This document shows, piece after piece, positions 26,784 through 58,238 of a stretch of 64,000 nucleotides of DNA; positions within the stretch are counted from its first letter, which is position 1; the number at the start of each line of letters is the position of its first letter. Below the pieces are notes generated by a model. It was given only the letters and a program-made list of their open reading frames with translations. It was not told the origin of the DNA and did no database searches. The position numbers and the translations under genes are program-made. The DNA is taken from positions 62,001-126,000 of the forward strand of contig NIVC01001780.1 in NCBI GenBank assembly GCA_002269645.1, written 5' to 3'. The DNA comes from Macrostomum lignano. Its lineage: Eukaryota.

Positions 26784-27480
26784 CAAGAGACGGGGGGGGG
26801 GCGCCCACTAAGAGACAGGGCTCTCACCAAGAGACAGGGGCGCCCATTAAGAGACAGGGACACCCACCAAGAGACAGGGGCGCCCACCAAAAGACAGGGG
26901 CGGCCACCAAAAGACAGGCGCCTACCAAGAGACAGGGGCGCCCACCTAGAGACAGGGGCGCCCACCAAAAGACAGGCGCCCACAAAAAGACAGGCGCCTT
27001 GCAAGAGACAGGGGCGCCCACCAAGAGTCAGGGGCGCCCACCAAGAGACAGGGACGCCCACCAAGAGACAGGGGCGCCCACCAAGAGACAGGGGCGCCCA
27101 CCAAAAGACAGGGGCACCCACCAAGAGACAGGGGCATCCACCAAGAGTCAGGGGCACCCACCAAGAGACAGGGGTGCCCACCAAAAGACAGGGGCACCCA
27201 CCAAGAGACAGGGGCATCCACCAAGAGTCAGGGGCACCCACCAAGAGACAGGGGCGCCCACCAAAAGACAGGGGCACCCACCAAGAGACAGGGGCATCCA
27301 CCAAGAGTCAGGGGCACCCACCAAGAGACAGGGGCATCCACCAAGAGACAGACGCGCGCCTACCAAGAGACAGGGGCGCCCACCAAAAGACAGGCGCCTA
27401 TCAAGAGACAGGGGCGCCCACCAAGACACAGGGGCGCCCACCAAAAGTCAGTGGCGCCCAGCAAGAGCCAGGGACGCCCT
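26784..27480. repeat. 20-bp GGCGCC-core minisatellite (caagagacaggggcgcccac)
   Basis: Direct reading. Confidence 0.96.
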
Positions 27481-28277
27481 CCAAAAGACCCCACCAAGAG
27501 GCACCGGACGCCCTGACATACATAGGCGTCATAATGATTAAAAATATGAACAAAACGATACGATCCCGCCCGAGAAAATGATCGTCAATTATAAAACCAT
27601 GGCTATAAAGCTGAGCCTACAGCAGAAACACAGTTTCACTTGGAAGACAATATCTAAGCTACATGTATATCCTACGATGATTAAGACTTGAGGGGGATCC
27701 CAGCTAAAGCTGCAGTTTGTTTGTCTACTCAGCTTGAAGCCGCTGGGCGCGTCGCTATAGTAGCTTCATCAATCAACAATTACGAAAAAAAGAATCCGAA
27801 CTGGTCGGACAACATGTGACGCTAGTGCAGTCATTTTGTTTCGGGTTTTGGGATCCTTAATGATCCTGCCTTGTAATTATTCATACTTGTGCCCCGCCGT
27901 ATTAAGCGAAGAAAAGAAAGATTCGCTTTTCACTTCCTACCACAACACAACTGGTCGAGTAATTGGGGGTCTGGGGGGTTGGGGTGGGGAAGTAAAAAAA
28001 ACAAGAAAGCCGCCCGAATGAATGACAATGACCCCGGGCCGACTGTCTCTGTGTGCACAGGCGGGATTGGTGCAAATGTTATGGCTGTGGGGCTTCTATG
28101 TATCTATCTCTTGTGCCTTGCGACTCCTGTCGTGTCTGTCTACCAATTTAGTAGTAGGCAGGTTTAACGACTCGTTTTAATTGCTGGGATGCCAATTTTT
28201 TGTTTCCTCAGTTTTGCCTGTTGTCGAGATTTGCTTGGTCTAAAATCTGAATGTTGAACTAGCACCCGGATTTAAAA

Positions 28278-28935
28278 TGTGGCGCCAATAGCACCCAGAT
28301 TGTGGTGCCATTAGAATCCAACTTGTGGCGCCATCAGGATTTTAACTGTGGCGCCATTAGCATCCAAATTGTGGCGCCATTAGCATCTACCTAAGATTGT
28401 GGCGCCATTAGCATCTACCTAAGATTGTGGCGCCATTAGCATATAAAATTGTGGCGCCATTACATCTAAATTGTGGCGCCATTGCATCCAAATTGTGACG
28501 CCATTAGCATCCAAATTGTGACGCCATTAGCATCTACCTAAGATTGTGGCGCCATTAGCATCTACCTAAGATTGTGGCGCCATTAGCATATAAAATTGTG
28601 GCGCCATTACATCTAAATTGTGGCGCCATTGCATCCAAATTGTGACGCCATTAGCATCCAAATTGTGACGCCATTAGCATCCAAATTGTGGCGCCATTAC
28701 CATCCAAATTGTGGCGCCATTAGTCTCCAGATTGTCGCGCCATTAGCACCCAAATTGTCGCGCCAATAATAGACATATTGTGGCGCCATTAACATCCAAA
28801 TAGTGGCGCCATCAGCACCCAAATTGTGGCGCCATTAGCATCCAAATTGTAGCGCCATTTGCATCCAAATTGTGGCGCCATTACCTTCCAAATTGTAGCG
28901 CCATTAGCATGCAAATTGTGGCGCCATTAGCACGT
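28278..28935. repeat. About 23-bp GGCGCC-core minisatellite (ttgtggcgccattagcatccaaa)
   Basis: Direct reading. Confidence 0.96.
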
Positions 28936-29502
28936 GAATCAGGGTCAGTATTTCACACAAAAAACTGCAAGTTAATTCTTGCGTTTCTCCAAACAGCAGG
29001 TGCGCCATTTCTCTGCTCGACAGTGAAACCGTATGAAACAGGATTATGTAATTTTCACTCGCACTTACACTTCGTACTCATTTTTGCTCTGCCCATTGCT
29101 GCTGTTTAAACTTTTTTCTGATCAGCTGCGATATATATATATAGGTGGCCGCCATTCTCAATGCCGCTACAATCGTGACTGGTTTGTTATGAGCGGCTCC
29201 AGACTTGTCAATCACTTTCACTGGCGCTTAAGTTATAAATGTAAAAAAAACTAGAAATTCTAGCAGACGTTTGACCAACTGCTTGCGCTGCGGGGCGGGA
29301 CATGGGATTAGGGTGTTGGGGGGGGATTTCGGAGTTGTTCGCACAGCTGTTCCATTTATACTGTGCGGTGTGACATGAGTAATGATATATAATAAATCCG
29401 CCCTTTGTTTATGCCTAGCCGAAACCCTGATCTCAAGGCCATACTTATAAACTGTTTGAGGAGCGATCCAGGTGAATGACAAACAATGCTATGATGTCAG
29501 AT

Positions 29503-30200
29503 TTGAGGGAGTGTCATTTCACTTGATTGAGTGCCATTTCACTTGAGAGAGTTCCATTTCACTTGAGAGAGTGCCATTTCACTTGAGAGAGTGCCATTTC
29601 ACTTGATTGAGTGCCATTTCACTTGATTGAGTGCCATTTCACTTGATGGAGTGCCATTTCACTTGCTGGAGTTCCATTTTACTCGATGGAGTGCCATTTC
29701 AATTGATGGAGTGCCATTTCAATTGATGGAGTGCCATTTCACTTGATGGAGTGCCATTTCAATTGATGGAGTGCCATTTCACTTGATGGAGTGCCATTTC
29801 ACTTGATGGAGTGCCATTTCACTTGATGGAGTGCCATTTCACTTGATGGAGTGCCATTTTACTTGATGGAGTGCCATTTCACTTGATGGAGTGCCATTTC
29901 ACTTGATGGAGTGCCATTTCACTTGATGGAGTGCCATTTCACTTGATGGAGTGCCATTTCAATTGATGGAGTGCCATTTCACTTGATGGAGTGCCATTTC
30001 ACTTGATGGAGTGCCATTTCACTTGATGGAGTGCCATTTCACTTGATGGAGTGCCATTTCACTTGATGGAGTGCCATTTCACTTGATGGAGTGCCATTTC
30101 AATTGATGGAGTGCCATTTCACTTGATGGAGTGCCATTTCACTTGATGGAGTGCCATTTTACTTGATAGAGTGCCATTTTACTTGATGGAGTGCCATTTC
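29503..30200. repeat. 20-bp minisatellite (ggagtgccatttcacttgat), about 34 units
   Basis: Strict 20-bp register; about 15/20 identical to the 57.7-kb GGCGCC unit. Confidence 0.97.
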
Positions 30201-30644
30201 ATCTCTCATATCGTCAGTAAATTCTGTGACTGGGGAGAGAGAGACCAAACGGGCAGCATCATGAGCTGCATAGAGGCTGAATCTCACCACACAAAGTGTC
30301 ACTCAATGCCCTTAATGCGCAGTTTACCTGTCTTTCAACTACAAAAAACAATAATTGAGTAGGTGAATTGTTGGATCTAGAACTTGGGGGTGGGGGAACA
30401 ATACACTCTCAGCCAGATGGTTGAAGCCCTCTGAAATATTTGCTCGCTAAACCTGGTTAGTTGTAAACAGCAACTCGACATTGTCCATCAATTTTTGCTT
30501 GTAGGGGCCGGCGTTAATTGCTCTAATGCGTCCCCTGTTGCAGATTGGTGTGAAAAAATATTATGTATCATCACCTGAAATATAACTTGTTATCTACTTA
30601 CTTCTGACCATTTTTTATCTGCGCATCTCTACGTGTAGATCTCA

Positions 30645-31200
30645 TCCTACTGCTCATCCATCTACTGTAGATCTCATCCTACTGCTCATCCATCTACTGT
30701 AGATCTCATCCTACTGCTCATCCATCTACTGTAGATCTCATCCTACTGCTCATCCATCTACTGTAGATCTCATCCTACTGCTCATCCATCTACTGTAGAT
30801 CTCATCCTACTGCTCATCCATCTACTGTAGATCTCATCCTACTGCTCATCCATCTACTGTAGATCTCATCCTACTGCTCATCCATCTACTGTAGATCTCA
30901 TCCTACTGCTCATCCATCTACTGTAGATCTCATCCTACTGCTCATCCATCTACTGTAGATCTCATCCTACTGCTCATCCATCTACTGTAGATCTCATCCT
31001 ACTGCTCATCCATCTACTGTAGATCTCAACCTACTTATCTCTCTCTCTTGTAGATCTCACCCAACTTTTATCTCACCCCTAGAGATCTCACCCTACTTCT
31101 TATCTCTTCCCTGTAGATCTAAACCTACTTCTCATCTTTCCCCTGGAGATCTCACCCTTACTTCTCATCTCTCTGTTTTAGATCCCACCCTACTTTTATC
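30645..31200. repeat. 32-bp array (tagatctcatcctactgctcatccatctactg), about 12 perfect units plus degenerate tail
   Basis: Period 32 (30668 to 30700). Confidence 0.97.
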
Positions 31201-31914
31201 CTCCCACCTAAAAAACTAGAATTTCATTATTCACCACAGTAGTGGTTTATAGAATCTCTTGAGTCGGGCGATCCCTTCAGTACGAACTCAGCAAGTCCAT
31301 CTGTACCGGGCGAGTCAGACTTGCAGTTTCCCAATTTCCTGTCGACTTTTCCTGCTTCTTTTTTTGTCGAAATTTTCTTCAAATCTTTCGCGCTGAAGTG
31401 AAACAGACACAGCTGGGAGCAGAGAGGTTGGAGACTGCTCAAAGCTAAACCCGCGCCATCTCAAGGCGCGATGATTCTGCGTTGGCCTTTTAATCAGTCG
31501 CAGAGGATCAGAGCAGCAATCCCCCCCCCCTGCGCGCGCTCCAGATCCCCAGATCTGTCGTCATCCGGTTGATTAGCTTGGCCACGCTGCCGCTACAGAA
31601 TCTCGGGCATCTCAGGATTAACTCGAATGGAATTAGGAGATAATACCCTGTGTGTGTGTAGCTTCGCATGCAGCTATCTATAGGAATTCCGAGAGCTCGG
31701 AGTAGAGGCTCAAACTCTCGCGCGTGTGACCGGGTGTGAAATTCGCCACACTTCCGCTGTACCAGTCCCATCCGTTATGCACACCTATCACTGTAGATAT
31801 CTTGTCGTTATTATAGTATTTAGACTATACTGCTATAGTAATGCATATTATGAGACTAGCTAATGCTCAATATTAATATGCAGTACAGCCTACTGAGGTC
31901 TGTAATGTGGCTCT

Positions 31915-34160: not shown

Positions 34161-34819
34161 TCAGCTTCAGTAGTTAGTCCAGTAAATGTTTTCAAAATGA
34201 AAATTAAATAATAAAACTACAGTTTGTATCCATTGTCCAAGTCAGCGCAGCAACAACCCGTGAAGGAGAGAGAGAGAGAAGCACACATGAATTCACATCC
34301 ACAAAGTCACTGAACTGGAAAACGAAGTCGCAACCCGCTAAGCCTATCTTATCTGTAATAATAATAAAAATGTGTCTCAAATGACACCCAGCTCACTTGT
34401 TCAGCACGCCGTCCCAGTTCTCAGTCCATGGCAGGCAACAGGCAAAGGGCGTCAGACTATACAGTTGCTTGGCCATAAAAATCGTAACAGCTTCTTCTTA
34501 GTTTCAGGTAGACTACCTCTCGCTCACACACAACATTTAGCTGTATATGACAAACTTGTTGCTCAAAAATCGCACCTTTCTGTCTGGAGTTGCAGTGCGC
34601 GTTTGACAATTAAATTTTATTACTTTTGTTGTTTAGGCATTTAATTATACTTTGGTCTTGGCTGAGTTGCCGTGGCATGTTTTGTACTCGTTTGTGTTTG
34701 TTGTAAAACTTTTCTTGAAATTTTGCTTTTTCATAAAGTAGCTGTCTATAGTGCATGCACACTGTGGATGGATGCCAGAAAGGTTTCTTTGGATGTCAGA
34801 CGTGCCAGTTTAAATGTTA

Positions 34820-35420
34820 GGGGCGCAAAATCCAAATTACAGTGTCAGTGGCGCCGAATCTAACTTGGTTATCAGGTGGCGCCAAATCCATAGCTGGTTG
34901 TCAGGTGGCGCCAAATCCAAAGCTGGTTGTCAGGTGGCGCCAAATCTAAATTGGGTTGTCAGTGGTGCCAAATCCAAATTGTGATGTCAGTGGCGCCGAA
35001 TTCAAACTGTGCTGTCAGTGGCGCCGAATTCAAACTGTGCTGTCAGTGGCGCCAAATCCAACTTGGAGTGTCAGTGGCGCCGAATCTAACTTGGTTGTCA
35101 GGTGGCGCCAAATCCAAAGCTGGTTGTCAGGTGGCGCCAAATCCAAAGCTGGTTGTCAGGTGGCGCCAAATCCAACTTGTTTGTCAGTGGCACCAAATCC
35201 AAAGCTGGTTGTCAGGTGGCGCCAAATCCAAAGCTGGTTGTCAGGTGGCGCCAAATCCAAATAGTGATGTCAGTGGCGCCGAATTCAAATTGTGATGTCA
35301 GTGGCGCCAAATCCAGATTGAGTTGTCAGTGGCGCCAAATCCAACTGAAATGTCAGTGGCGCCAAATCCAACTTTTTTTTAAGTGACGCCAAATCCAACT
35401 GAGATTTAAGTGGCGCCAAT
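34820..35420. repeat. 22-29-bp GGCGCC-core minisatellite (gtcagtggcgccaaatccaa...)
   Basis: Direct reading. Confidence 0.95.
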
Positions 35421-37354
35421 TCCAATATTTTCGGTGCCCAATAGTTAGGAATTAAAATGAAATTAAAGAAATGGATAATTTTTAGCAATTCTATGAAAGC
35501 AACGGTTTGAAATGATTCGTACGCCGTCAAATGAAAGAAAAGCGACATGCCGTGTCACGGGAACGAAAAATCACAATTGAGTTTTTTATTCGCTCAAAGA
35601 TCAAGCTTAAGATAAGGAGGAGAGTGGGGAGATCATTTTTTGAAGCAAAAAGAAAATCCCAGCCCATATGGCCCCCTGCAGACAGGGAGAGTCAGTTTAA
35701 GCTCAAGAAATTAAAAGCAATGATTTTCTCTTGACCGCTGGCTACCTGCAGGAGTGACGCAATCGCGGGCGCAGTTTCCGTGTTTCGGTTTTTTTCAAAG
35801 TCTTCTTTTTTCTATAAAAAAAGAACCCCGGCTTTTGTTATAATAGACGAAGCAGAGAAATGAAATTTGAGACATTGAGTTCTGTGCGGCGCACGCTACC
35901 GCTTAAAATGTTATTATGTAATCTATATATACTGTATGTATAGCTCAACATATACTCGTATTTTATTTTGCCAATACTGGCATGGCTTGTTGCGCTAAGT
36001 ATTGGTGACTCTCGGACGATATAAGCTCCTCTATTGCTTTTGGCTTACAAGATTTCAGTCCCCTGATTAGCTTTGGTTCTTTGGAAAGGATTTTTTCTCT
36101 AAATGCTGAATTTGGCTGGGGCTTGCGGTCAAGGAGACCCACAGAGATATAGAGAGACTGGACCAGTTCAGGCTGACCTCAAGTTTTCATACACAAAATT
36201 ACGAGTGCCACCTCAAACGTAACACATTTGTGTATGAGTAGTTGGGATGCTTGGGAATTTAGTGCTCAAACCCCCCCCGAACTTCTCAAACTTCAGAATT
36301 GGAGCCAAGCCAAAAAGTTGTCTGCATTTCTGAGGATTTAAGGCAAGAGCTGGCGAACCAAGTTGCTGGCTCTGGGCCTCCTTGGCGGCATGGATGACCC
36401 CACACTGACTCAGGGGGGGGGAAGGGGGCTGAGCAAATTAATAGAAAATCTCTGTAAGCCCCGGCTTTGTTGCCCCCAACAAAACGAAGTCTAAAGAAAT
36501 CCGACAGATCACGGAAAGCGTTGCATTGCGGACAAGAAAATTGTGATTGTCGGATATCCGCTTCGTTTTTCGTGCACGGACCGCTAGAGACTTGGAATAG
36601 AAGCCAACAAATTATCTGTACAAGATTCCCCATTTCAACTGTATCGAGGGCTCAATTTAAGCATTTTGTCTTTGAGAATTTCGGTAACGTTGCGATTTTT
36701 TCAAATTCACTAAGATTTGAATCATTTAGAAAATTTTAATTGATACTTAAATTATTTAGATATTTGAGTAATTTATTCAGAATTTATTCAGCTTTTGAAC
36801 GACTTCTTAGTTTAAAAAATGAGCATACCGTTTTGAAATTATGTTAAACAAAGTGAAGGCACTCTACTCAATTTGACTATCTTCCTGTGCATAAGACTCA
36901 TCCGGACTGATCAGAGATGAGCCCTGTTGATAAATTTGATCAGCTTCCACTTGTTCAACTACAAAATTTAAGATTGACAGTTTGAGATAAGCACCGGAAA
37001 ACACGCTGGATGAAGTTTTTTGGATAAACCTATAGATGGGCATTTATATGGAAGTTTTGCAGGGAAAGTTTAATTAGAGCCAAACCAGCCGCAGAACAAA
37101 GACTCTCTGTGGAGAAGCTTGCTTTTCCTTAGACCGCCACCTGGACCACCTGTTGCTCTTGGCTTTATTCGTAGTCTGCGATATTTTCTACATGCCAAAA
37201 ATGTCGGTTGATGCAAGTCAGCTGCCTTCATTCAAAACTCGTATAGAGGTTGAGGCTGGGAAGATGGAAAGGGATATGACGTAAGAGCCTTTTTGGCACT
37301 AATTAGCACAGCAATTATTCCGTGACTAAATCCCCACGGCTACACTGGGGTGGC

Positions 37355-37985
37355 CTCTTGACTCCCAATCTTGGCGCCCCATAACTTTGAATATGGTGGG
37401 CGCCCCTTGACTCTGAATGTTAGCGCCCCTTGACTCTGGATGTTGGCGCCACTTAACTCTAGATGTTAGCGCCCCTTGACTCTAGATGTTAGCGCCACTT
37501 AACTCTAGATGTTAGCGTCCCTTGACTCTGGATGCTGGCGCCCCTTGTCTTTAGATGTTGGCGCCACTTGACTCTGAATATTGGCGCCACTTGACTCTGA
37601 ATATTGGCGCCACTTGACTCTGAATATTGGCGCCACTTGACTCTGAATATTGGCGCCACTTGACTCTAGATATTGGCGCCACTTGACTCTGAATATTGGC
37701 GCCACTTGACTCTGAATATTGGCGCCACTTGACTCTGAATGTTGGCGCTACTTGGCTCTGAATACTGGCGCTACTTGACTCTGAATAATGGCGCCCCTTG
37801 TCTCTGAATACTGGGTCCGCTTGACTCTGAATACTGGCGCCACTTGACTCTGAATACTGGCGCCACTTGACTCTGAATACTGGCGCCACTTGACTCTGAA
37901 TACTGGCGCCACTTGACTCTGAATACTGGCGCCACTTGACTCTGAATGTTGGCGCCACTTGACTCTGAATATTGACGCCCCGTTG
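37355..37985. repeat. 23-bp GGCGCC-core minisatellite (ttggcgccacttgactctgaata)
   Basis: Period 23 (37561 to 37584). Confidence 0.96.
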
Positions 37986-38471
37986 ACTTCTCGCAGCTAA
38001 AATGAAACCAAAGCAGACAGTCTCGCATCATGGTTAGCTAGCGGCCACTTTCACCGAGGAACAAAGGAAAAGAAAGTTTTTTTATTGCTCGCATTGGTTA
38101 TCAGCATCTAGCCGCTGGTGCAGGGTCCAGTCAGGGGGCAGGGGGTATGGCCAGAGGCTGCAATGCAAAGGAAAAAATGGAAAGAAGGTTGCAGCAAGCA
38201 GCCTTTAATTCCCAATGACCAGCCTCTATTATGGCTTCTACGGTTGCTCCCGCAGGGGGTCACTATATTATTATATATATATATATAATTTCTTCTGTGC
38301 CTCATAATTTGCTTTTTCTGTATCCATGGATAGCAAAATCCGCAGATTTTGGCTGTGTTTATTGTTATATCATATTGTGCCACTGTGATATTATTGCACA
38401 GGTATTGGTACAGTCTGTGCGGATGATATATGCCATGCCTGATCGCTTTGTGCCCCGTTTTTAATCCAGAG

Positions 38472-39016
38472 AAGGCGCCTCTCATACCCAAGAAATGGCG
38501 TCTCTCGTATATGAGAAATGGCGCCTCTCATATCCCAGAAATGGCGCCTCTCATACCTGATAAATAGCGCCTCTAGTACCTTAAAATGGCGCCTCTCATA
38601 CCTGTGAAATAGCGCCTCTCGTATATGAGAAATGGCGCTTCTCATATCCCAGAAATGGCGCCTCTCATAACCTGAGAAATAGCGCCTCTCGTACCTTAAA
38701 ATGGCGCCTCTCATATCTGACAAACGGCACCTCTCATGCCAAAAAATGGCGCCTCTCATACCTGAGAAATAGCTCCTCTCGTACCTGAGAAATGCGCCTC
38801 TCGTACCTGAAAAATGGCGCTTCTCATATCCCAGAAATGGCGTCTCTTATATCCGAAAAATGGCGCCTCTCATAACCTGAGAAATAGCGCCTCTCATAAC
38901 CTGAAAAATGGCGCCTCTCATAACCTGAGAAATAGCGCCTCTCATAACCTGAAAAATGGCGCCTCTCATCCCTGAGAAATGCGCCTCTTATACTTTGAGA
39001 AAATGGCGCCTCTCAA
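38472..39016. repeat. About 23-24-bp GGCGCC-core minisatellite (gaaatggcgcctctcatacct)
   Basis: Direct reading. Confidence 0.95.
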
Positions 39017-39810: not shown

Positions 39811-40367
<557 letters not shown>

Positions 40368-44340: not shown

Positions 44341-44916
44341 TGAGAGATAGAGATGAGCGAGAACTAATAGGGAAAGTTTTCCATAGCACAAGATATATGA
44401 ATATGAATGCGCAAAGCTACAATCGGAGGTCAGTGAAGGTGCCACCAGGAATTGCTCTCAGTAATTGCTAACTATTCCGGAAGCGACCAGTCCACATACC
44501 TGGCAACTTTATAAAGCTTTGAACTTTCCTGTAGCTCACATTTATTATTGGCCTTTGCCACAGCAACTGTTCAAAAAATAGTCATTTCTATCTTTATAAT
44601 TTCTTTTTCTTGCAAGGAAGCCCAATTAGTGCGGCAAGGACCAAGGAGTGCGGAGTGTTCCAGGAATGCTGGGCCACCAAAGCTGGCCTTCATTTTTTGC
44701 CCTTCACTTTCACCACCACCCTGTTCAGGAGGGTTGTGGCGAGATCGTTTCCACAACCAGAGTGCTCAAAAAAGTCACCCTGTGCGATCGCGTGTGTATG
44801 AGTGGATTGATAGACGAAAAGCCTTCAAGATTTTAATTGGAGATGCCAAAATCCAGAGGCAGAGCTCTCGTCTTCTTGAGCTGAGCTGATTTGATATCGT
44901 CAGGATCGTGAGGATT

Positions 44917-45530
44917 AGATGTCGTTGAGATGGGTCAACTGACCTATTAGATGTCGTTGAGATGGGTCAACTGACCTATTAGATGTCGTTGAGATGGGTC
45001 AACTGACCTATTAGATGTCGTTGAGATGGGTCAACTGACCTATTAGATGTCGTTGAGATGGGTCAACTGACCTATTAGATGTCGTTGAGATGGGTCAACT
45101 GACCTATTGGATGTCGTTGAGATGGGTCAACTGATCTATTAGATGTCGTTGAGATGGGTGAACTGACCTATTAGGCATTTTTAGAATGGGTCAACTGACC
45201 TATTAGACATTTTTAGGCATGAGTCAACTGACCTATTAGACATTTTTTATAATGAGTCAACTGACCTATTAGACATTCTTAGAATGAGTCAACTGACCTA
45301 TTAGACATTTTTAGGCATGAGTCAACTGACCTATTAGACATTTTTTATAATGAGTCAACTGACCTATTAGACATTCTTAGAATGAGTCAACTGACCTATT
45401 AGACATTTTTAGAATGAGTCAACTGACCTATTAGACATTCTTAGAATGAGTCAACTGACTTATTATACGATTTTAGGATGAGTCAACTGACCTATCAGAC
45501 ATTGGATCAGGATGGGTCAACTGAATCGTG
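44917..45530. repeat. 32-bp minisatellite with GGTCAACTGACC core
   Basis: Unit tagatgtcgttgagatgggtcaactgacctat; period 32 (44941 to 44973). Confidence 0.96.
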
Positions 45531-47290: not shown

Positions 47291-47929
47291 CCTTTTCATC
47301 CCCTGTCTCTCTTCCTCTCCCTCTCCGCCGTCCCTATCTCTTACATCTAATTCTATTCTTTTCAAAAGGAGAACTTTTCCTTCCCCTCCTCCTAACTTCA
47401 CTGCTCCGCCGTCAAAGTCTTCCCAAGAAACCATTTTCCTCGTGACCTACTCAAATCGCTCGCTCACTCAACCAAAAAACCCCTCATATTTCTCATTTTC
47501 CAAATGTCACAAGCAGAAAAGAATCCTATGAAAGGAATACCAGGATCGCCTCTCTATTGCGTTTGCAAACTTTTATCCTATCGAACTCTGTCTCATCTCA
47601 ATCCCTTCTCATTTCCTATCTACTTCCCAGCTATAGTACTGCCCTCGAACTTAATTTTGACCCTCTATACCTAAGCCAGGGGTTAGGGAGGTCCACCATA
47701 CTTGGAGAAAGAATTTCTCGTTCGAACGGAACTCCTTCGGCTGGCACAAAATCAATTTGGGTTCGAGTTTTTCAGCTCAAGCTCAGATTTAGTCATGGCT
47801 TGCTTTCTTGGAGCCCGAGCTAGACAGCCGCAGAACCCTAATTTAAGCCCATTCAACTGCGTTTCATTCAACTCCTCAGTCAAATCGTAATCTGCACTTT
47901 TGCATTGATCCGCTACCGGTAGACTCTGA

Positions 47930-49145
47930 GAATGGGTCACCTGACCCACTAGATCTTCATCATGGGTCACCTGACCCACTAGATCTTCATCATGGGTCAA
48001 CTGACCCACTAGATCTTCATCATGGGTCAACTGACCCACTAGATCTTCATCATGGGTCAACTGACTCACTAGATTCCAGAATAGGTCAACTGACCCACTA
48101 AATCTTCAGAATGAATCAACTGACCCACTAGATCTTCAGAATGAATCAACTGACCCACTAGATCTTCGGAACGGGTCAACTGACCCACTAGATTCCAGAA
48201 TGGGTCAACTGACCCACTAAATCTTCAGAATAAGTCAACTGACCTACTAAATCTTCAGAATGAATCAACTGACCCACTAGATCTTTAAAATGGGTCACCT
48301 GTCCCACTAAATCTTCATCATGGGTCAACTGACCTACTAGATCCCAGAATGGGTCAACTGACCTACTAGATCTTTTGAATAGGTCAACTTATCCACTATA
48401 TTTTCAGATTGGGTCAACTGACCCACTAACTCTTCATAATGAGTCAACTAACCTACTAGATCCCAGTGTTGTGTCGCAAATGACTAAGAAAAGTTCATTC
48501 TGTGAGTTTTAGAACGAGGCGAGATAAATTCTTTATTTCAAAGAGCGATAGTCAATAGCAAAATATTATATAGCGATCAGGAGAGAGTGGTGGAAGGTGA
48601 CAATATTTGGGGTGGTGGGCAAGGCGCACACAGGTAGACAGAGTGTACTAGAGAAAATGAGTATGTACTTGCAGAGGAATAAAATAAGTAAGAACAGAAA
48701 ATATAATAAACAAGTTGCGATGCAAAATAAGTCAGTCAGCTCAAATCCACATAAGTTCATCGAGTCATTCAAATAAGTTAAAGTCAAACGCCGCCTCACC
48801 CAGAATGGATCAATTAACCCACTAGATCTTTAGAATGAGTCAACTGACCCACTAGATCTTCAGAATGGGTCAATTGACCTAGTAGATCCCATAATGGGTC
48901 AACTGACCCAACAGATCTTCAACTGACCTACTAGATCTTTTGAATGGGTCAACTTACCCCCTAGATCTTCATTATGGGTCAACTGACCCACTAAATCTTT
49001 CGAATGAGTCAACTGACCTACTAAATCTTCAGAGTGGGTCAATTGACTCACTAGATCTTTAGAATGAGTCAACTGACCTACTAAATCTTCAGAGTGGGTC
49101 AATTGACCCACTAGATCTTCAGAATGAGTCAATGACCCAATAAAT
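47930..49145. repeat. 30-bp minisatellite with GGGTCAACTGACCC core, interrupted by a solo LTR
   Basis: Unit atgggtcaactgacccactagatcttcatc on both sides of 48467-48798. Confidence 0.95.
48467..48798 (-). mobile_element. Solo LTR (332 bp) inserted into the minisatellite
   Basis: TG...CA termini; 5-bp TSD CCCAG at 48462-48466 and 48799-48803; the empty-site sequence agatcccagaatgg occurs in another unit (~48340); on the minus strand TATATAA (~48572-48566) lies about 35 bp upstream of AATAAA (~48537-48532). Confidence 0.85.
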
Positions 49146-50698: not shown

Positions 50699-50854
<156 letters not shown>

Positions 50855-51564
50855 CTCTGAGGTGGGTCTCCACGAGATTATACATTTAGTCCGCCAAGCT
50901 CCCGCAAATTCCAAATAATGGAATTTCACAGCCCCAAGCAGGAAGAGCCAGGATTGCAAGCAGCAGCCAGAATGCGCATTCGAAGCCCCCTGGGGGCAGG
51001 TGACAGATCAAGATTGGTTGCGAAGTGGCACCCTGGGGTGACGGGCAAACAGCTGCCCCCATTGTGAGGCGGGGAGGCCGCCACACCCACCGCCCTCACT
51101 TGAGCTGCTCAGCTCTCAGGCAGAATTCAATTATGACCACTGCTCACCTTTATCTACTCGGCTCTTCACTTTACAATTTAAGTCCCTAATCACTCTGCAA
51201 CTATTCCCCCCTAAAGGCTTGTTTTATAGTTGCTAAGCTGTTGATAATAATTTTGCCACTTTTAATGTGTTGAGTTCTGACGCATTTTTACACTTTTATT
51301 ATATGGCTTATACTTAGCCGGCAGATGCAAAAGTGATAATGGGCCAGACCTCTGATTTATCTATCTATCTATGTATGTATCTTGTATCTTGTATCTGGTA
51401 TCTTGATGGATGTCAGAGTAGATTTATTTGATAATCATCTGTCTAAAAATGACAACTCTCACTAAGGACTTGGTTATTTTTTAATCTCGAATATAAATTG
51501 TAGTACACATTTAAGGACCTCTTGTGTCTTTGAATTGGGGCCATTTAACCAAAAACAATTTGGT

Positions 51565-51950
51565 CAGATTTAGCGCCACTAGGTCAGGTTTGGCGCCACT
51601 GGGTCAGATTTGGCGCCACTATGTCAGATTTGGTGCCACTGGGTCAGATTTGGCGCCACTATGTCAGATTTGGCGTCACTGGGTCAGATTTTGGCGACAC
51701 TAGGTCAGATTTGGCGCCACTAGGTCAGATTTGGCACTACTCAGAGTCAGATTTGGCGCCACTAGGTCAGATTTAGCGCCACTAGGTCAGATTTGACGTC
51801 ACTAGGTCAGATTTGACGTCACTAGGTCAGATTTGACGTCACTAGGTCAGATTTGACGTCACTAGGTCAGATTTGGCACTACTCAGAGTCAGATTTGGCG
51901 CCACTAGGTCAGATTTGGCACTACTCAGAGTCAGATTCGGCGCCATAAAG
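51565..51950. repeat. 20-bp GGCGCC-core minisatellite (ggtcagatttggcgccacta) including four TGACGTCA variant units
   Basis: Direct reading. Confidence 0.96.
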
Positions 51951-52175
51951 TAAAATTTCGAAGCCATTGAAATAGTTTAGTCGCCGTTAAACCGGCGCCA
52001 CTAAATCAATTTGTATAAGCATTGGATTCGACTCAAATCTGATGCAGCAATCGATAGGAGAGAGATATTAAAACTGCTCACTTTGCGGCCAATACAGCTA
52101 GCCAGTTCATCCAGTTAACTTTCTCTTCATATCTTTGAGTCAGAGAGATTTCCAGTTTAATGCGGCCGCCAGCGC

Positions 52176-52371: not shown

Positions 52372-53811
52372 GTGAGTAAGGAAGGAACTGCAGCCATAAG
52401 ACGGGGGGTCACTTCCCGTTTCCCCTAAAAAGAAGAAAAGCCGGCCGCAGATAAAAGCAGAAAAGAGCTTCCTAGGGATTGTTCAAAATAAGTTTTCTAA
52501 GATTAAAACCAACTTCATTAATATAGGGACAATAATTATGAGAAGCTCTGATGCGTCTACTGAGAAAAAAAATTATTAGGACCATCAGGCGGCCATCTTT
52601 GCGAATGACTAACTGAAAAGAATAATTTTGAGCTCAGTGGTGACTCATCGATGCGATGAAAATATTGGCGATGGGTGAAAAAAAGTGATTATTTTTTTTG
52701 TCGGCCCACCTGTTATAAAAATGTTTGAATTACCTGTAAATTGAATATACATTTTTATTCGATTAATAAATAAATAATACGCGTATTGTCCACCGATCGA
52801 TACATTGTTGCAATTATCATTGTTGCTTTCCAATGATCAGTAGATAATCATTTTAACTGCTGGCCTATGAGCACAGGCAGCACAAGCTGAAACGGCGGCT
52901 GCCACCAGATTAATGTATGAATATTTTATCCTTTCAGGGTCATCACGCTTGTAGCGGCTTGTGTTTGGGAATTGGGGAGTTGAGTTGCGTGATGAGGTGC
53001 AGAGGAATCTGTAAGGGGGGGGCGGCTTCTCAAATCCGCTATAAACCCGCGCGTTCACACACCAAACGTGCACTTGTGAGCTATAGGAACTGCGAACTAA
53101 AGGCTCTGCTTCAGATCTCCCAGATATCACGCCATCCTCTTGTACTTAATCTGTATTGCTTGAGCCTGAGTCAATACTTAACTGCTCACAAATTGTACCA
53201 ACACAAAAATCTTGAGTACAAGTTGTTCCACTACAGAAAGGAGAGAATAGCAGTCGTCTCGAACACTTTATGTTTATCTTGTAGGCCCTGCAATTCTTTC
53301 CTGACTCTTCCAGGGTAACAAAAGTTCATTTTTCCCTGTTCGAGAACTATGGAATGATGAATATTTTAAAAGCATTGTCATGGATACCCCCATCCCTGCC
53401 TCCCCGTCTGACTGTCGCCTGTCTTTAAAAAAAAGAGAAAACTTCTCCAAAAAAAGAAAAAGTCGCCAGAAAAAAACTTGAATGAATGTAGCAGACAGAC
53501 AACAGCAACGCTCTCAAGCGCCGAGAGACAGAGAGATTAAGTCTGACTGCTTCTCCGCCATTGGCTCCAAGGCCTGGTCCAATGAGAGGGTCCTCAAGCA
53601 AAGCTGGCACAAGCAGGGACTAATGGTGGGAGGCCCAACCAACCCGCGAAGGAGGCGAACTGTGGAAATCCTTTCCAGAAGAAATAGCCAAGCGACACAC
53701 AAAAAGCTTCGTTTGTAGTCTGCCGCCCCTTATGAGTGTCCCGACTTTCTGCTTTTTTCTCTTTAGTTAAGATGTTTGAAAATTGCTAGCAGATTTTACT
53801 CCTCACAAAGC

Positions 53812-56559
53812 ATGCGGATTGTACGAATCTTAAGTCTTCTGCAGCTTCTAGCATCTGCCGCCTTCGCCGCCATCGAGATGCCTCTGGGAGCTGACGATGT
53901 CAACTTCAACACCAAGGTGGGAAATCTGGCTCGCCAGGATCCAACGCTGCCAGCGCCTGAGTCCGAGTCCGGTCAGTACGACAGCGTCCGGCTCATCCCG
54001 CTGAACAGCAGGCTGGCCGGCTACTTCACCATCGATCGTCAGACCACCGTGTCGGCGATGCGCGACATCGACCGCGACGAGATTTGCTCTCTGGCCGCCT
54101 GCTGCGAGACCATCGACTGTCGGCTTGACTACACCGTGTCCATCACCGTTCGAGCCGGCTTCCCCGTGACCAGATCCCTCAGCCTGATCCTGGTTGACGA
54201 GAACGATCAGAAACCAATCTTCCCCAATCTGGAGCCAATTGACATCGCAGAGGACGCGCCAGTCGGCCTGACTAATATCCGCCTGGCCTCGGCCACCGAC
54301 AAGGACTCGCCGCCGAACCGGGTAAAAAACTACAGCATGACCGACCCAAGCGGCACGTTCGATGTCTTCATCCGGGACGGAGTGGTGCCGTACCTCAAGC
54401 TGCTGGTACCGCTGGACCGGGAGCGCGTGCCCCAGTACCAAGTGACGCTCCGAGCTACAGACGGTGCGCACGAGAGCTCCGTTGTGGTGACAATCCGCGT
54501 CACGGATGTCAACGACAATTCCCCCGTGTTCGTTAGAGATCTGGTGACAACCAGCTTTTCCGAGAACGAAAAAGTTGGCGCGCAAATCACCCCCCTGTCG
54601 GCGAACGACGTCGATACGGGACCGAACGCCAACCTGACCTACAGTATCGAATCAGTGACGCCCGCAGCTCTCGCCAGCCACTTCAGCGTGGGCATCAAGG
54701 ACGGTCAGTCGAAACTGTTGCTAGCTAAGAGCTTAGATTATGAGCAACCGGAGCAGCGTTCGGCTAAAATCCTGGTTGTCGCCCGGGATCAGGGCACTCC
54801 GCCGAGGTCTTCCACCTTGACAATCCAAGTCAGCGTCACAGACTATAACGACAACGATCCAGTGATCAAGGAGCTCAGCAGCCATGTCCTGGAGGAGCAC
54901 ATGCCGGCGGGCCAGCTGGTGAAAACCCTACTGGTCACCGACGCCGATAAAATTTCCATCGGGCTGGTGATCTGCAAGATCGATTCGTCCAATCCACGCT
55001 TCCGGCTGCAACTCGGCAGCGCCTCCACCACCCTGGACTCGATGGAGCGGCTGATTTACAACATGACAACGGCTTCATCATTCGACTACGAGGTCATGCA
55101 GGTGGAGACCGTCAAGATCAAGTGTGTTGACAACGCCTCGCCGGGTCGACACGCGTCTCGAACCTACGAAATTCCAATCAACGAGACCAACGACTTCGCA
55201 CCGATCTTTGACAAGAGAAACTACCACGCGGCTGTTTACGAAGATCTCGCCGAAGGCCTGTCAGTCCTGCCCATGCCAGTGCTGGCTACCGATAAGGACA
55301 GGGGCACCTACGGCGTGGTGCTCTATGAACTGGATGCCGAAGGGCAGAAGAACTTCAGCATTCGTGAGTCTAGCGGAATTGTTGAAGTTCGCGGCCGACT
55401 GGACAGGGAAACAGCCACGCATCTGAGCTTCAAGGTGATAGCGAAGAACTACGACGGGCCAAAAGGTGTTCTAAGCGACACGGCCAAGGTGGTAATCGAA
55501 CTTCTGGACGTGAACGACAACAAGCCTCAGTACCTAGGACCTCCGGGCTTCTCTGTTGTTGAGAACTCGCCCCCGGGAACCCTGGTGGGCCGCGTACAGT
55601 TCCAAGACGACGACGCTGGAGAGAACGGCACCGTTCGCTTCCAGATCAGCGGATCCGAGAACGACAATGTCGCCAACGAGTACCTGCGGCTTGACGAGGC
55701 CGGCAACATCACCGTGCAGAAGAAGATCGACCGCGAGGTTCACAGCAGATTCTTCCTGTCCATCAGAGCCAACGACCTTGGCCGTCAGGTCACCCAGACC
55801 ACTGTAGTTCAGCTGGATATCGAAGTGCAGGACGTCAACGACTGTCACCCGGTGATCCGCGAGCCCAGGCCGAGCGCCCTGGTCGGCGTAAATCCCGTCG
55901 TTTACACCGATCTGCCGCGCAAATCCATGCTGGTGCTGGTGCTGGCCGAGGACAAGGACCGGGGCGAGAACGGGACCCTGACCTACCGCCTGGGTCCTGG
56001 CAACGCCACCGACCTGCTGGGCATCGACGCCGACAAGGGCGAGCTGCACTCGCTGTGGGACCCTCAGTTGCAGCCGCCGCCACCAGGAATCTACTCCGTC
56101 ACGGTCATCGTGTCTGACCGCGGCACGCCCGAACCGTTGGAGGATCGCGTCGCCTTCTACCTGAAGCTCACCGCGCCTCGCGGGCAACTGTACCGGTTCG
56201 GCTCCGCGGGACTCAGCGGCCTCATTATCCTGGTGGTGATCATTGCCGGCACAGTCATCATCGCTGTTGGATTGATCGCCGCGATCTGCTACGTCCGCGG
56301 ACGCTCTGGACTGTCCGCATTTGGCAACGACCCGGCCGACAGCGAGGCGCGGGTCAAGATGACGGACGAGGACGGCGGTTGCGGCGGCTACCGTGACAGT
56401 CCACGGATCTACGGGAGCCAGCAGCAGCAGCAGCTCCTGCTGCAGCAGCAACAGCAGCATCAGCAGCAGATGCACCAGCAGCATCAGCAGCAGTTTTACA
56501 CCTGGCAGAGATCGGGATCTCCTATGGGCAGCTTGATGAAGGAAGACTGCAACAGCCAG
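53812..56559 (+). CDS. Protocadherin (7 EC repeats, delta1-like), large exon encoding signal peptide, ectodomain, TM and proximal tail; further cytoplasmic exon(s) expected
   Basis: Signal peptide MRIVRILSLLQLLASAAFA; linkers DENDQKP, DVNDNSP, DYNDNDP, ETNDFAP, DVNDNKP, DVNDCHP plus a seventh repeat; LDRE/LDYE and A.D.D motifs; TM LIILVVIIAGTVIIAVGLIAAICYV; donor CAG|GTAAGA at 56560, phase 0. Confidence 0.95.
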
Positions 56560-56629
56560 GTAAGATGAGCTTGCGGTGCTTTTTTAGTATAAATTTTGGT
56601 AGTTCAATGAGTAGATTGATGGATAGCTG

Positions 56630-57275
56630 GAGGCGCCTAGCAGACATCAGGGGCGCCAATCAGACACCAGGGGAGCCAAAAAGACACCAGGGGCGCCAAA
56701 ACAGACACCAAGGGTGCCAAGCAGACACCAGGGGCGCCAATTAGACATCAGGGGCGCCAAGCAGACACCAGGGGAGCCAAAAAGACACCAGGGGCGTCAA
56801 AACAGACACAAGGGGCGCCAAGCAGACACCAGGGGCGCCAATTAGACATCAGGGGCGCCAAGGCCAAGCAGACACCAGGGGCGCCAATCAGACATCAGGG
56901 GCGCCAAGAAGACACCAGGGCGCCAATTAGACATCAGGGGCGCCAACCAGACATCAGGGGCGCCAAGCAGACACCAGGGGCGCCAATTAGACATCAGGGG
57001 CGCCAAGCAGACACCAGAGGAGCCAAAAAGACAGCAGGGGCGGCAAAACAGACATAAACAGACACCAGGGGCACCAAGCAGACACCAGGGGCGCCTAAAC
57101 AGACAGCAGGGGCGGCAAAACAGACATAAACAGACACCAGGGGCGCCAAAAAGACACCAGGGGCGCCAAAAAAGACACCAGGGGCGCCAATCAGACATAA
57201 ACAGACACCAGGGGCGCCAAAAAGACACCAGGGGCGCCAAAAAAGACACCAGGGGCGCCAATCAGACATCCAGAC
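56630..57275. repeat. About 20-bp GGCGCC-core minisatellite (agacaccaggggcgccaa..), starting about 70 bp after the protocadherin donor
   Basis: Direct reading. Confidence 0.95.
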
Positions 57276-57699
57276 ATCAAGACCCTCAAAAACCTCATCA
57301 AGACCTCAACAGGTGCCAACTAGACGATACAATAAATACCAAATTTTGCAACCGCAATGCAACACGTAGTTATGCATTAGGCCACTAAGAACATCTAAAA
57401 TAGTCAGGACTTTATACTGTACTGCATGAAGCATCAAACAGACTTAGCAAATAAAAGGTCTTGAGAAACCATGACAGACACACGAAAATAGGTTAGGCGT
57501 TTGGGTACACATTCGTAGCGGGTCGTTGTGTTTGCTATAACACTTCTCCGCGTTCGCATTGCACTAGCTCTATAGTTTCTTGTTTGAACTATTACATATT
57601 GAATGCTAAACATAAATTCCTGGGAAATTCGTTTTGGTTTAGTTTGCGGGGAAAGTTTTTCTCAGCTTTGGCATGGACAGGGTTGTTTTACATCGGGAA

Positions 57700-58238
57700 G
57701 GCGCTATTTCATCCAAGGGGACGCTATTTCATCTAAGGGGCGCCATTTTATCTAAGGGGCGCCATTTCGTCTAAGGGGCGCCATTTCATCTAAGGGGCGC
57801 CATTTTATCTAAGGGGCGCCATTTCGTCTAAGGGGCGCCATTTCATCTAAGGGGCGCCATTTTATCTAAGGGGGCGCCATTTCATCTATGGGGGCGCCAT
57901 TTCATCTAAGGGGGCGCCATTTCATCTAAGGGGGCGCCATTTCATCTAAGGGGGCGCCATTTCATCTAAGGGGGCGCCATTTCATCTAAGGGGGCGCCAT
58001 TTCATCTAAGGGGGCGCCATTTCATCTAAGGGGGCGCCATTTCATCTAAGGGGGCGCCATTTCATCTAAGGGGGCGCCATTTCATCTAAGGGGACGCCAT
58101 TTCATCTAAGGGGGCGCCATTTTATCTAAGGGGGCGCCATTTTATCTAAGGGCGCCATTTCATCTAAGGGGTGCCATTTTATCTAAGTGGGCGCCATTTC
58201 ATCTAAGGGGCGCCATTTTATCTAAGTGGGCGCCATTT
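57700..58238. repeat. 19-20-bp GGCGCC-core minisatellite (ggggcgccatttcatctaag)
   Basis: Direct reading. Confidence 0.96.

What the first reader, a model, noticed from the sequence alone, without database searches (positions are those of the whole stretch)
26784..58238. Eight separately flanked minisatellite arrays share a GGCGCC palindromic core at 20-24-bp spacing around the protocadherin locus
Seen: arrays at 26.8, 28.3, 34.8, 37.4, 38.5, 51.6, 56.6 and 57.7 kb have different unit sequences and no shared flanks, yet all are built on GGCGCC. They form three subgroups: CAGGGGCGCC (26.8, 56.6); (GAT)TTGGCGCCACT (34.8 reversed, 37.4, 51.6; 14 bp identical between 34.8 and 51.6); AATGGCGCC (28.3 reversed, 38.5, 57.7 reversed). 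The 29.5-kb GTGCCATTTCA array looks like a CpG-less ninth relative. None of the arrays in the first 26 kb has this core. Known: TGGCGCCA is the centre of the palindromic E2F-family motif, CGCCATTT is a YY1/Pleiohomeotic site, and both are CpG-sensitive; fly Polycomb response elements combine PHO sites with GAGA tracts, and large GA tracts lie between these arrays. Inference: roughly 200 phased sites may form a minisatellite-built regulatory or chromatin domain (PRE-like, or an E2F/YY1 sink), or GGCGCC may be the seed for a sequence-specific amplification mechanism.
Basis: partly seen in the sequence, partly recalled or inferred. Interest (0 to 1): 0.78.

Follow-up and report, generated by a model that had tools for sequence, protein, structure and literature searches.

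The report
Flatworm minisatellite family sharing GGCGCC core
Eight short tandem-repeat arrays in this Macrostomum flatworm region really do share a GGCGCC core, but they belong to a repeat family scattered across the genome's introns and intergenic DNA, and nothing testable here ties them to control of the protocadherin gene.

Summary
Of 142 exact GGCGCC sites in the window, 138 lie in eight arrays with periods of 20-29 bp; shuffles predict 4.6 sites. The 29.5-kb array is a true relative that has lost the core.

The window is from Macrostomum lignano or a very close relative. About half of its non-coding DNA alternates between minisatellite arrays and unique spacers. Core-bearing arrays also occur at three other M. 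lignano loci, one with an identical 20-bp consensus and unrelated flanks. Across 53 arrays, GGCGCC is the most widely shared 6-mer (12 arrays; shuffles give 0.19).

So this is a genome-wide minisatellite superfamily with three subfamilies and an extended motif WWTGGCGCC-M-C-T. It is locally clustered here.

- It is not transposon-borne: flanks share no sequence or motifs.
- It is not an E2F or YY1 site field: there are no full E2F palindromes, 23 E2F half-sites and 18 strict YY1 sites.
- Within arrays, the core mutates as fast as other G/C positions and shows no CpG decay.
- Between arrays, the core persists while the rest of the unit is almost randomised. This points to a bias when arrays are founded or copied, not to selection on each site.

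Why the core persists is unresolved.

The parts
26777..27513 (+). Array 26.8: 20-bp unit CACCAAGAGACAGGGGCGCC, about 35 copies, 18 exact cores. Subfamily G1.
   Evidence: TRF 26798-27489. Edges extended by alignment to the unit concatemer. Consensus identical to the array at M. lignano L001 6361-6771; the arrays are 83% identical. Plus/plus homology to 56.6.
28274..28932 (+). Array 28.3: 23-bp unit AAATTGTGGCGCCATTAGCATCC, 27.9 copies, 19 exact cores. Subfamily G3; carries the 8-bp palindrome TGGCGCCA.
   Evidence: 69% identical to 57.7.
29503..30201 (+). Array 29.5: 20-bp unit TTGATGGAGTGCCATTTCAC, 35 copies, 95% matches, no GGCGCC. A G3 relative that has lost the core.
   Evidence: blastn to 57.7 gives 68% over 492 bp, E 4e-37.
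34815..35450 (+). Array 34.8: 27-29-bp unit GGCGCCAAATCCAA(AGC)TGGTTGTCAG(G)T, about 21 copies, 18 exact cores. Subfamily G2.
   Evidence: Its inner-edge units match the reverse complement of 37.4 units in 17/19 positions.
37353..37988 (-). Array 37.4: 23-bp unit, read on the minus strand as GGCGCCAATATTCAGAGTCAAGT, 27.5 copies, 19 exact cores. Subfamily G2, inverted relative to 34.8.
38466..39015 (-). Array 38.5: 23-bp unit GGCGCCTCTCATACCTGAGAAAT (minus strand: GGCGCCATTTCTCA...), 23.5 copies, 11 exact cores. Subfamily G3.
   Evidence: Shares the 14 bp GGCGCCATTTCTCA with the 40-bp array at L004 15097-16612.
51562..52013 (-). Array 51.6: 20-bp unit GGTCAGATTTGGCGCCACTA, about 19 copies, 7 exact cores plus one in the decayed tail at 51994. 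Subfamily G2. Lies about 1.8 kb upstream of the protocadherin exon.
   Evidence: Its reverse-complemented unit matches the GGCGCT-core array at L003 2407-3155 in about 15 of 20 positions, by my own alignment of the consensus units.
56632..57273 (+). Array 56.6: 20-bp unit GGCGCCAAGCAGACACCAGG, 33 copies, 22 exact cores. Subfamily G1. Lies 72 bp downstream of the putative splice donor of the protocadherin exon.
57700..58252 (+). Array 57.7: 19-20-bp unit GGCGCCATTTCATCTAAGGG, 27.9 copies, 24 exact cores. Subfamily G3.
53812..56559 (+). Context, not a family member: the large cadherin-repeat exon of a protocadherin gene. It ends at a GT donor, with more exons presumably downstream.
   Evidence: Pfam Cadherin, E 1.2e-73. 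Best relatives are M. lignano P0001 and P0002 at 48% identity. Donor CAG|GTAAGA. Paralog gene models span 20-36 kb with arrays in their introns.

Best explanation
The arrays belong to a genome-wide superfamily of non-coding minisatellites in Macrostomum lignano or a very close relative. They are not a device built for the protocadherin locus.

Shown:
- About half of the non-coding DNA in all five loci examined is minisatellite arrays (most often 0.5-0.7 kb in the window) alternating with unique spacers of mostly 0.4-1 kb.
- The GGCGCC family is the largest sequence-related group among these arrays. It has three subfamilies, and units are homologous end to end within a subfamily.
- Family members sit in introns and intergenic DNA at unrelated loci.

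Inferred: arrays lengthen and homogenise by replication slippage and unequal exchange. They are copied to nearby and distant sites, sometimes with flanking DNA and mostly without detectable flanks. Extrachromosomal-circle or microhomology-mediated insertion, as proposed for insect euchromatic satellites, is a plausible route. Each copy then drifts to a new unit.

The eight-array cluster here reflects local propagation, as seen for other array families in the same window.

The 9-12 bp block WWTGGCGCC-M-C-T is retained between arrays, yet individual copies of it are not protected within arrays. I therefore infer a bias that acts when an array or a new unit type is founded or copied. One candidate is that the all-G/C palindrome serves as the preferred register or microhomology. 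Another is that a protein binds it. I do not infer selection on about 200 individual binding sites.
For: - Species and locus: the GPCR ORF at 5362-6999 is 99% identical to M. lignano P0241. M. lignano contig NIVC01002760.1 is colinear with window 1-21.7 kb at 87-97% identity.
- Core arrays at other loci: L001 6361-6771 has an identical 20-mer consensus with flanks unrelated to the window's. Others are L001 7452-8486 and 54364-55286, L002 35418-36180 and L004 15097-16612.
- Enrichment: 12 of 53 array units carry GGCGCC, against 0.19 in shuffles.
- Extended motif and weak residual similarity beyond the core: 5.45 of 14 flank positions match, against 4.51 +/- 0.17 by chance. In gapped comparisons, 7 of 55 unit pairs reach p <= 0.05. 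Full-unit homology holds within G2.
- Relatives with a decayed core exist: window 29.5 kb, L003 2407-3155 (GGCGCT) and L004 13377-14410.
- Other array families also cluster locally: 44.9/47.9/48.8 kb and 60.4/63.6 kb.
- One pair of same-unit arrays shares 114 bp of flank at 72% identity, so at least some copies moved with flanking DNA.
- Arrays persist across the roughly 10% divergence between the homeologous copies with unchanged consensus units.
- Within arrays, core transitions occur at 5.8-6.9% per position, against 6.3% at non-core G/C positions.
- Analogous spread of short satellite arrays into gene-rich DNA is documented in Drosophila (PMC7403614) and Tribolium (PMC11610590).
Against: - Simple neutral descent cannot explain the core. 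With non-core positions only about 39% identical between unit types, an unconstrained 6-mer should survive in roughly 0.4% of descendants. Here 13 of 16 recognisable relatives keep it. Some sequence-specific process is needed, and I could not identify it.
- Array boundaries do not fall preferentially on the core: 11 of 26 junctions, against 8.3 expected. The integration-by-core-microhomology version therefore has no direct support.
- The density in 26.8-58.2 kb (8 arrays in 31 kb) is about nine times that in the other 173 kb sampled (5 arrays). The local cluster is therefore real. A local function is not excluded.
- The sample outside the window is only 140 kb, and two of the four extra loci were chosen through protocadherin paralogs.
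Confidence: 0.6

Rival explanations
1. Motif-seeded array genesis. A sequence-specific DNA-binding protein, nuclease or recombinase recognises WWTGGCGCC-M-C-T. By stalling forks or making breaks, it provokes tandem duplication of about two helical turns around each site. Arrays are therefore born repeatedly with the same core but different remaining sequence, and each added copy strengthens the effect.
For: - The core is retained between arrays while the rest of the unit is almost randomised between subfamilies.
- Individual units are not constrained within arrays, as expected if only the number of intact sites matters.
- Solitary GGCGCC is no commoner than chance outside arrays: 4 in the window, against 4.6 expected for the whole window.
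- The conserved block is 9-12 bp and asymmetric, a typical protein footprint.
Against: - The core-less 29.5-kb array is the most homogeneous (95%) and is as long as the others.
- Core-less arrays in the same loci have the same 20-23 bp period and the same lengths, so neither property needs the motif.
- Identical units at unrelated loci require dispersal anyway.
- Junctions are not on the core.
- No protein is known.
Confidence: 0.2
2. Regulatory or chromatin domain. The phased sites recruit E2F, YY1/PHO or a related factor. Together with the GA tracts they form a Polycomb-response-like or factor-sink domain that controls the protocadherin.
For: - The local density of core arrays is about nine times that in the other loci sampled.
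- CGCCAT, the PHO/YY1 core, occurs 66 times in the arrays, and TTTSGCGC 23 times.
- Large GA/CT arrays lie between the core arrays.
- L001, a protocadherin paralog locus, has two core arrays 1.5-3.6 kb upstream of the gene.
Against: - No single consensus covers the family: there are no full E2F palindromes, strict YY1 sites occur in only three arrays, and G1 arrays have neither.
- The second protocadherin paralog has no core array upstream or in its first intron, while a GPCR locus has one.
- Sites are not better conserved than neighbouring bases.
- GA/CT arrays and the 20-bp period are ubiquitous in all loci sampled.
- Whether flatworms have PREs at all is unknown to me.
Confidence: 0.08
3. 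The arrays are the internal tandem repeats of a transposon family (Helitron-like, MITE or foldback), scattered by transposition.
For: - Identical units occur at unrelated loci.
- 34.8 and 37.4 form an inverted pair 1.9 kb apart.
- One array pair shares 114 bp of flank.
Against: - No similarity among spacers by blastn (word size 9) or by Smith-Waterman against shuffles.
- No k-mer is shared above chance in the 120-bp flanks of 73 arrays.
- No terminal inverted repeats surround the arrays.
- The flanks of window 26.8 and L001 6361 are unrelated.
- No transposase-like ORFs lie in the spacers from 25.5 to 53.7 kb.
Confidence: 0.05

Closest known systems
Core-sharing hypervariable minisatellite families of vertebrates (Jeffreys' 33.6/33.15 'core' minisatellites; from my own knowledge, not tested here)
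   Same: Many separate loci have different unit sequences and lengths. Their flanks are unrelated. They are united only by a short G/C-rich core of about 10-15 bp.
   Different: Here the core is a CpG-containing palindrome, GGCGCC, in an asymmetric 9-12 bp block. Periods cluster at 20-28 bp. The arrays are extremely dense, about one per 1.3 kb of non-coding DNA. Copy-number hypervariability and any link to recombination hotspots are untested.
Euchromatic dispersed satellite arrays: Drosophila 1.688 and Rsp-like (PMC7403614) and Tribolium Cast1-9 (PMC11610590)
   Same: Short arrays of one repeat family lie scattered in gene-rich DNA and introns. Related arrays cluster locally. New arrays appear at new loci without a transposon. 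The proposed mechanisms are unequal exchange plus insertion of extrachromosomal circles or microhomology-mediated insertion.
   Different: Those satellites have monomers above 100 bp that stay recognisable along their whole length. Here the units are 20-28 bp and only the core block is common to the subfamilies. No eccDNA or junction-microhomology evidence exists for this family.
Satellite-DNA 'library' model (from my own knowledge)
   Same: A set of related repeat variants coexists in one genome and is differentially amplified at different places.
   Different: The library model does not predict one invariant hexamer in otherwise randomised units.
Clustered E2F or YY1/PHO sites and Polycomb response elements
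   Same: Some units contain TTTGGCGC (an E2F half-site) or CGCCAT (the PHO/YY1 core), and GA tracts lie nearby.
   Different: No consensus covers all arrays, and the full E2F palindrome is absent. Sites are not conserved above background. The family is not locus-specific.

Membership tests
Minisatellite | Head-to-tail copies of a 10-100 bp unit, tens of copies, non-coding | tested here: met
   TRF gives periods of 20-28 bp, 19-35 copies and 74-95% matches. There is no coding signal or RNA family.
Core-sharing minisatellite family (Jeffreys type) | Different loci with different units and unrelated flanks share a short core beyond chance | tested here: met
   12 of 53 arrays carry the core, against 0.19 in shuffles. 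Flanks are unrelated.
Core-sharing minisatellite family (Jeffreys type) | Copy number hypervariable between individuals or germlines | not testable with these tools
   There is only indirect evidence: a core-less 14-bp array has 86 copies in the window and 31 in the homeologous contig. The core arrays lie beyond the reachable part of that contig.
Core-sharing minisatellite family (Jeffreys type) | Association with meiotic recombination hotspots or a hotspot-specifying protein | not testable with these tools
   No recombination or binding data are available.
Dispersed euchromatic satellite spread by eccDNA or microhomology | The same monomer at several loci with unrelated flanks, plus local clusters | tested here: met
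   Window 26.8 and L001 6361 have identical consensus units and unrelated flanks. Local clusters are shown.
Dispersed euchromatic satellite spread by eccDNA or microhomology | Junction microhomology, or presence on extrachromosomal circles | tested here: inconclusive
   Junction phases are not concentrated on the core (11 of 26 against 8.3 expected). Array edges are decayed, so junctions are imprecise. eccDNA cannot be tested.
Transposon-internal tandem repeats (Helitron, MITE, foldback) | Conserved element termini, terminal inverted repeats or target-site duplications flanking the array | tested here: not met
E2F site cluster | Units match TTTSGCGC, ideally the palindrome TTTGGCGCCAAA | tested here: not met
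   There are 23 half-site matches confined to three arrays and no full palindromes.
Polycomb response element | Clustered PHO/YY1 sites with GAGA-type tracts | tested here: inconclusive
   CGCCAT occurs 66 times, but almost only in 28.3, 38.5 and 57.7. GA arrays are present, but they are present in every locus sampled.
Polycomb response element | PcG protein binding, H3K27me3 and silencing activity | not testable with these tools
   No chromatin data are available.

The most novel reading that the evidence does not exclude
WWTGGCGCC-M-C-T is the recognition site of a flatworm DNA-binding protein, nuclease or recombinase that nucleates minisatellites. Each bound site provokes local tandem duplication, or serves as the crossover point between arrays and circles. 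The genome would then keep generating new about-20-bp arrays around one protein's motif, making this a protein-driven, self-reinforcing repeat generator. That would explain why the core outlives the rest of the unit without protection of individual copies.
Probability: 0.15. Interest if true: 0.75.

Novelty: new member of a known kind. Interest (0 to 1): 0.4.

Why it matters
M. lignano is a regeneration and stem-cell model whose genome is hard to assemble because of its repeats. Published accounts give only bulk figures: simple and tandem repeats make up 15% of the assembly (PMC5730564). My searches found no description of its minisatellite families or of a GGCGCC core.

A defined superfamily with a 9-12 bp invariant block gives a concrete handle on how short arrays are born and spread in gene-rich DNA. 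The handle can be probed with oligonucleotides, Circle-seq and the genome's own homeologous copies.

For annotation, the practical message is that these CpG-rich phased motifs near genes should not be read as regulatory elements without chromatin evidence.

Tried and rejected
1. Transposon origin. Self-blastn, Smith-Waterman of 15 spacers against shuffles, k-mer sharing in the flanks of 73 arrays and an inverted-repeat search all found nothing.
2. Ancient segmental duplication of the block 26.8-30.2 kb onto 56.6-58.2 kb. The array order and orientation fit (G1 then G3), but the spacers show no similarity. It is left as an untested possibility.
3. tRNA, snRNA or other RNA origin of the units. 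Rfam at gathering and relaxed thresholds and ARAGORN found nothing.
4. A general rule that array units are built on palindromes. The excess (31 of 52 units with a palindrome of 6 bp or more, against 22.2 expected) disappears once the GGCGCC family is removed.
5. Spacers as decayed arrays. No residual periodicity was found.
6. Core as the integration junction. Boundary phases are not enriched on the core.
7. Purifying selection on the core within arrays. The difference is not significant, and transition rates are equal.
8. CpG decay as evidence of methylation. None was seen, although low-level 5mC is reported for the species (PMC11292947).
9. Coding exons in the spacers between 25.5 and 53.7 kb. 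No convincing ORFs were found.
10. Synteny of the core arrays in the homeologous contig. The reachable locus (L003) ends at window position about 21.7 kb. The RIOK2 and protocadherin products are not on record, so the rest of the contig could not be fetched.


Full report
**What is in the sequence**

TRF reports about 33 distinct tandem arrays in the 64-kb window, covering roughly 40-45% of it. The nine arrays named in the finding are all present. GGCGCC occurs 142 times, against 4.64 +/- 2.12 in dinucleotide-preserving shuffles. Of these, 138 lie in the eight arrays, one lies in the decayed tail of the 51.6-kb array, and three are solitary at 1791, 6463 and 25220.

The dominant core-to-core spacings are 20 bp (26.8, 51.6, 56.6, 57.7), 23 bp (28.3, 37.4, 38.5) and 27-29 bp (34.8). 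There are about 215 units, but only 138 carry an intact core. Self-blastn confirms the subgroups: 26.8~56.6 is 67% identical, 28.3~57.7 is 69%, and 29.5~57.7 is 68% over 492 bp (E 4e-37). It finds no similarity among non-array sequences.

**Is it more than chance?**

Sites inside one array are not independent, so I counted arrays instead. Among 53 array consensus units from the window and two other loci, GGCGCC is the most widely shared 6-mer, present in 12 arrays. It ranks ahead of all the low-complexity AG words. Shuffling each unit gives a mean of 0.19 arrays and a maximum of 3 in 5000 trials. Any 6-mer at all reaches 12 arrays in only 0.04% of shuffles. GGCGCCA is in 10 arrays and GGCGCCAA in 7.

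**Where the window comes from**

- The long ORF at 53776-56568 is a cadherin-repeat exon (Pfam E 1.2e-73). Its best relatives are two Macrostomum lignano proteins at 48% identity.
- The GPCR ORF at 5362-6999 is 99% identical to M. lignano P0241.
- M. lignano contig NIVC01002760.1 is colinear with window 1-21.7 kb, at 96.6% identity in the coding stretch and 87-91% elsewhere.

The window is therefore M. lignano or a very close relative, and that contig is a homeologous or divergent copy. M. lignano is described as a hidden tetraploid (PMC5704211), and its assembly as more than half repetitive with 15% simple and tandem repeats (PMC5730564).

**The family is genome-wide**

I fetched four other M. 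lignano loci, 140 kb in total: two protocadherin paralogs (L001, L002), the homeolog (L003) and a GPCR paralog (L004). All have the window's architecture of arrays, mostly a few hundred bp to about 2 kb, alternating with unique spacers.

Core arrays among them:
- L001 6361-6771 has a 20-bp consensus identical to the window's 26.8 array. The arrays are 83% identical and their flanks are unrelated.
- L001 7452-8486 and 54364-55286 have the unit CACTCATTTTGGCGCCGCAGG.
- L002 35418-36180 has the unit GAGGGAGGCAGTGGCGCCAAGAGAA.
- L004 15097-16612 is a 40-mer sharing the 14 bp GGCGCCATTTCTCA with 38.5.

Relatives with a damaged core also exist. L003 2407-3155 (TTGGCGCTACTAG...) matches the 51.6 unit in about 15 of 20 positions. 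L004 13377-14410 has GGCCCC in its consensus and GGCGCC in some units. The window's 29.5 array is the third.

Of the two protocadherin paralogs, one has core arrays upstream and the other has none upstream or in its first intron. The family is therefore not tied to protocadherins. Its density in 26.8-58.2 kb (8 arrays in 31 kb) is nonetheless about nine times that in the rest of the sample (5 arrays in 173 kb).

**Anatomy of the shared block**

Because the core is a palindrome, I oriented each unit so that GGCGCCA reads to the right. The 11 distinct unit types then give A-G-(T/G)-GGCGCC-A-(A/T)-(A/T). Read on the other strand this is WWT-GGCGCC-(A/C)-C-T. G at position -2 occurs in 10 of 11 types and A at +1 in 10 of 11.

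Beyond the core, similarity is weak but above chance. In ungapped comparison, 5.45 of 14 flank positions match, against 4.51 +/- 0.17. In gapped comparison the mean z is 0.76, and 7 of 55 pairs reach p <= 0.05. Within a subfamily the homology spans the whole unit. For example, 34.8, 37.4 and 51.6 differ mainly by a 5-6 bp indel.

By this orientation, the arrays from 26.8 to 34.8 read on the plus strand, 37.4 to 51.6 on the minus strand, and 56.6 and 57.7 on the plus strand. Arrays 34.8 and 37.4 form an inverted pair 1.9 kb apart.

**Tests of the transposon idea**

- Spacers share nothing, by blastn at word size 9 or by Smith-Waterman against shuffles.
- No 8- or 10-mer is shared above chance in the 120-bp flanks of 73 arrays.
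- No terminal inverted repeats bracket the arrays.
- No transposase-like ORFs lie in the spacers.
- No RNA family or tRNA matches the units.
- Only one pair, L001 7452 and 54364, shares flank: 114 bp at 72% identity. That shows some copies were duplicated together with neighbouring DNA.

**Tests of the binding-site idea**

- Strict E2F half-sites (TTTSGCGC) occur 23 times, in three arrays only.
- The palindromic E2F site never occurs.
- Strict YY1 (GCCATNTT) occurs 18 times in arrays.
- CGCCAT occurs 66 times, almost only in 28.3, 38.5 and 57.7.

No known consensus covers the family.

Within arrays the core is not consistently the best-conserved window. It is the best in 5 arrays and the worst in 3. 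Mean conservation is 0.927 for the core against 0.896 for the rest of the unit (Wilcoxon p = 0.22).

Per-unit transition frequencies are 6.9% at the core's CpG, 5.8% at its other G/C positions and 6.3% at non-core G/C positions. Individual sites are therefore not protected. There is also no methylation-type CpG decay, although low-level 5mC is reported for this species (PMC11292947).

The 20-23 bp period and the 0.5-0.7 kb modal length are shared by core-less arrays. A general excess of palindromes in array units vanishes once this family is removed.

**What remains unexplained**

If non-core positions are only about 39% identical between unit types, a neutral 6-mer should survive in about 0.4% of descendants. 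Yet 13 of 16 recognisable relatives keep it. Within arrays, meanwhile, it mutates like everything else.

The block is therefore favoured when an array or a new unit type is founded or copied, not while it is maintained. Candidate causes are:
- a binding protein or nuclease;
- the all-G/C palindrome acting as a preferred register or microhomology for misalignment, circle formation or reintegration;
- crossover at the core between different arrays.

Array junctions are not enriched on the core (11 of 26 against 8.3 expected). The core-less 29.5 array is the most homogeneous of all. Neither the seed model nor the integration model has direct support.

**Comparison with known systems and verdict**

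The closest analogues are the core-sharing hypervariable minisatellites of vertebrates (from my own knowledge) and the dispersed euchromatic satellites of Drosophila and Tribolium. For the insect satellites, unequal exchange plus insertion of extrachromosomal circles or microhomology-mediated insertion has been proposed (PMC7403614, PMC11610590).

I found no description of this family or of Macrostomum minisatellites. I file it as a new member of a known kind: a real, non-random, genome-wide minisatellite superfamily that is locally clustered here. The regulatory-domain reading is unsupported, and the seeding reading is open but weak.

Noticed in passing
window 18893-25350: A RIOK2 gene. Its exons (Rio2_N at about 18.9-19.2 kb; RIO domain at 21716-22225 and about 22966-23079) are separated by introns that consist almost entirely of minisatellite arrays running nearly from splice site to splice site: 19177-21707 (23-mer x 108), 22277-22795 and 23207-24899.
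   Followed up: partly
window 19-64 kb; L001, L002, L004 throughout: Strikingly regular architecture. Arrays (modal length 530-700 bp, period mostly 20-23 bp) alternate with unique, non-periodic spacers. Spacers are mostly 0.4-1.0 kb in the window and 0.4-1.5 kb in the one other locus checked by hand. About half of the non-coding DNA is tandem array. I found no explanation for the regular spacing.
   Followed up: partly
window 11434-16478: An A+T-rich segment of about 5 kb (GC 28-31%) carries the 42-bp and 82-bp arrays, which contain the palindromes AAGTACTT and TTTGCAAA. It is absent from the homeologous M. lignano contig. There, only window 12048-12842 has a counterpart, inverted and about 0.7 kb away. 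This is a candidate insertion or rearrangement.
   Followed up: partly
window 62545-62805 (minus strand) and 25-99; L001 50841-51094 and 51753-51994: A dispersed repeat of about 260 bp (79-95% identical between copies). Its head gives a weak tRNA match (Rfam RF00005, 18.8 bits, below threshold). It is probably a tRNA-derived SINE.
   Followed up: partly
window 44914-45502, 47929-48462, 48801-49139: A second local array family (30-32 bp units) is built on a long palindrome. It reads TGGGTCAATTGACCCA (16 bp) or GGGTCAACTGACCC, which is an inverted pair of GGTCA half-sites like a nuclear-receptor element.
   Followed up: no
window 617-3406 vs L003 7193-8459: Arrays conserved between the two homeologous copies keep the same consensus unit but differ greatly in copy number. 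The 14-mer has 86 copies in the window and 31 in L003. (AGAC)n has 218 copies in the window and 57 in L003.
   Followed up: partly
window 56419-56493: A CAG/CAA run encodes a polyglutamine stretch at the end of the protocadherin exon, just before the putative splice donor at 56559|56560.
   Followed up: no
window 30628-31194, 60390-60822, 63372-64000: Arrays sharing TACTGCTCAT follow the G1-G3 array pairs at both 26.8-30.2 kb and 56.6-58.2 kb. This hints at an ancient duplication of a multi-array block whose spacers have since diverged beyond recognition.
   Followed up: partly
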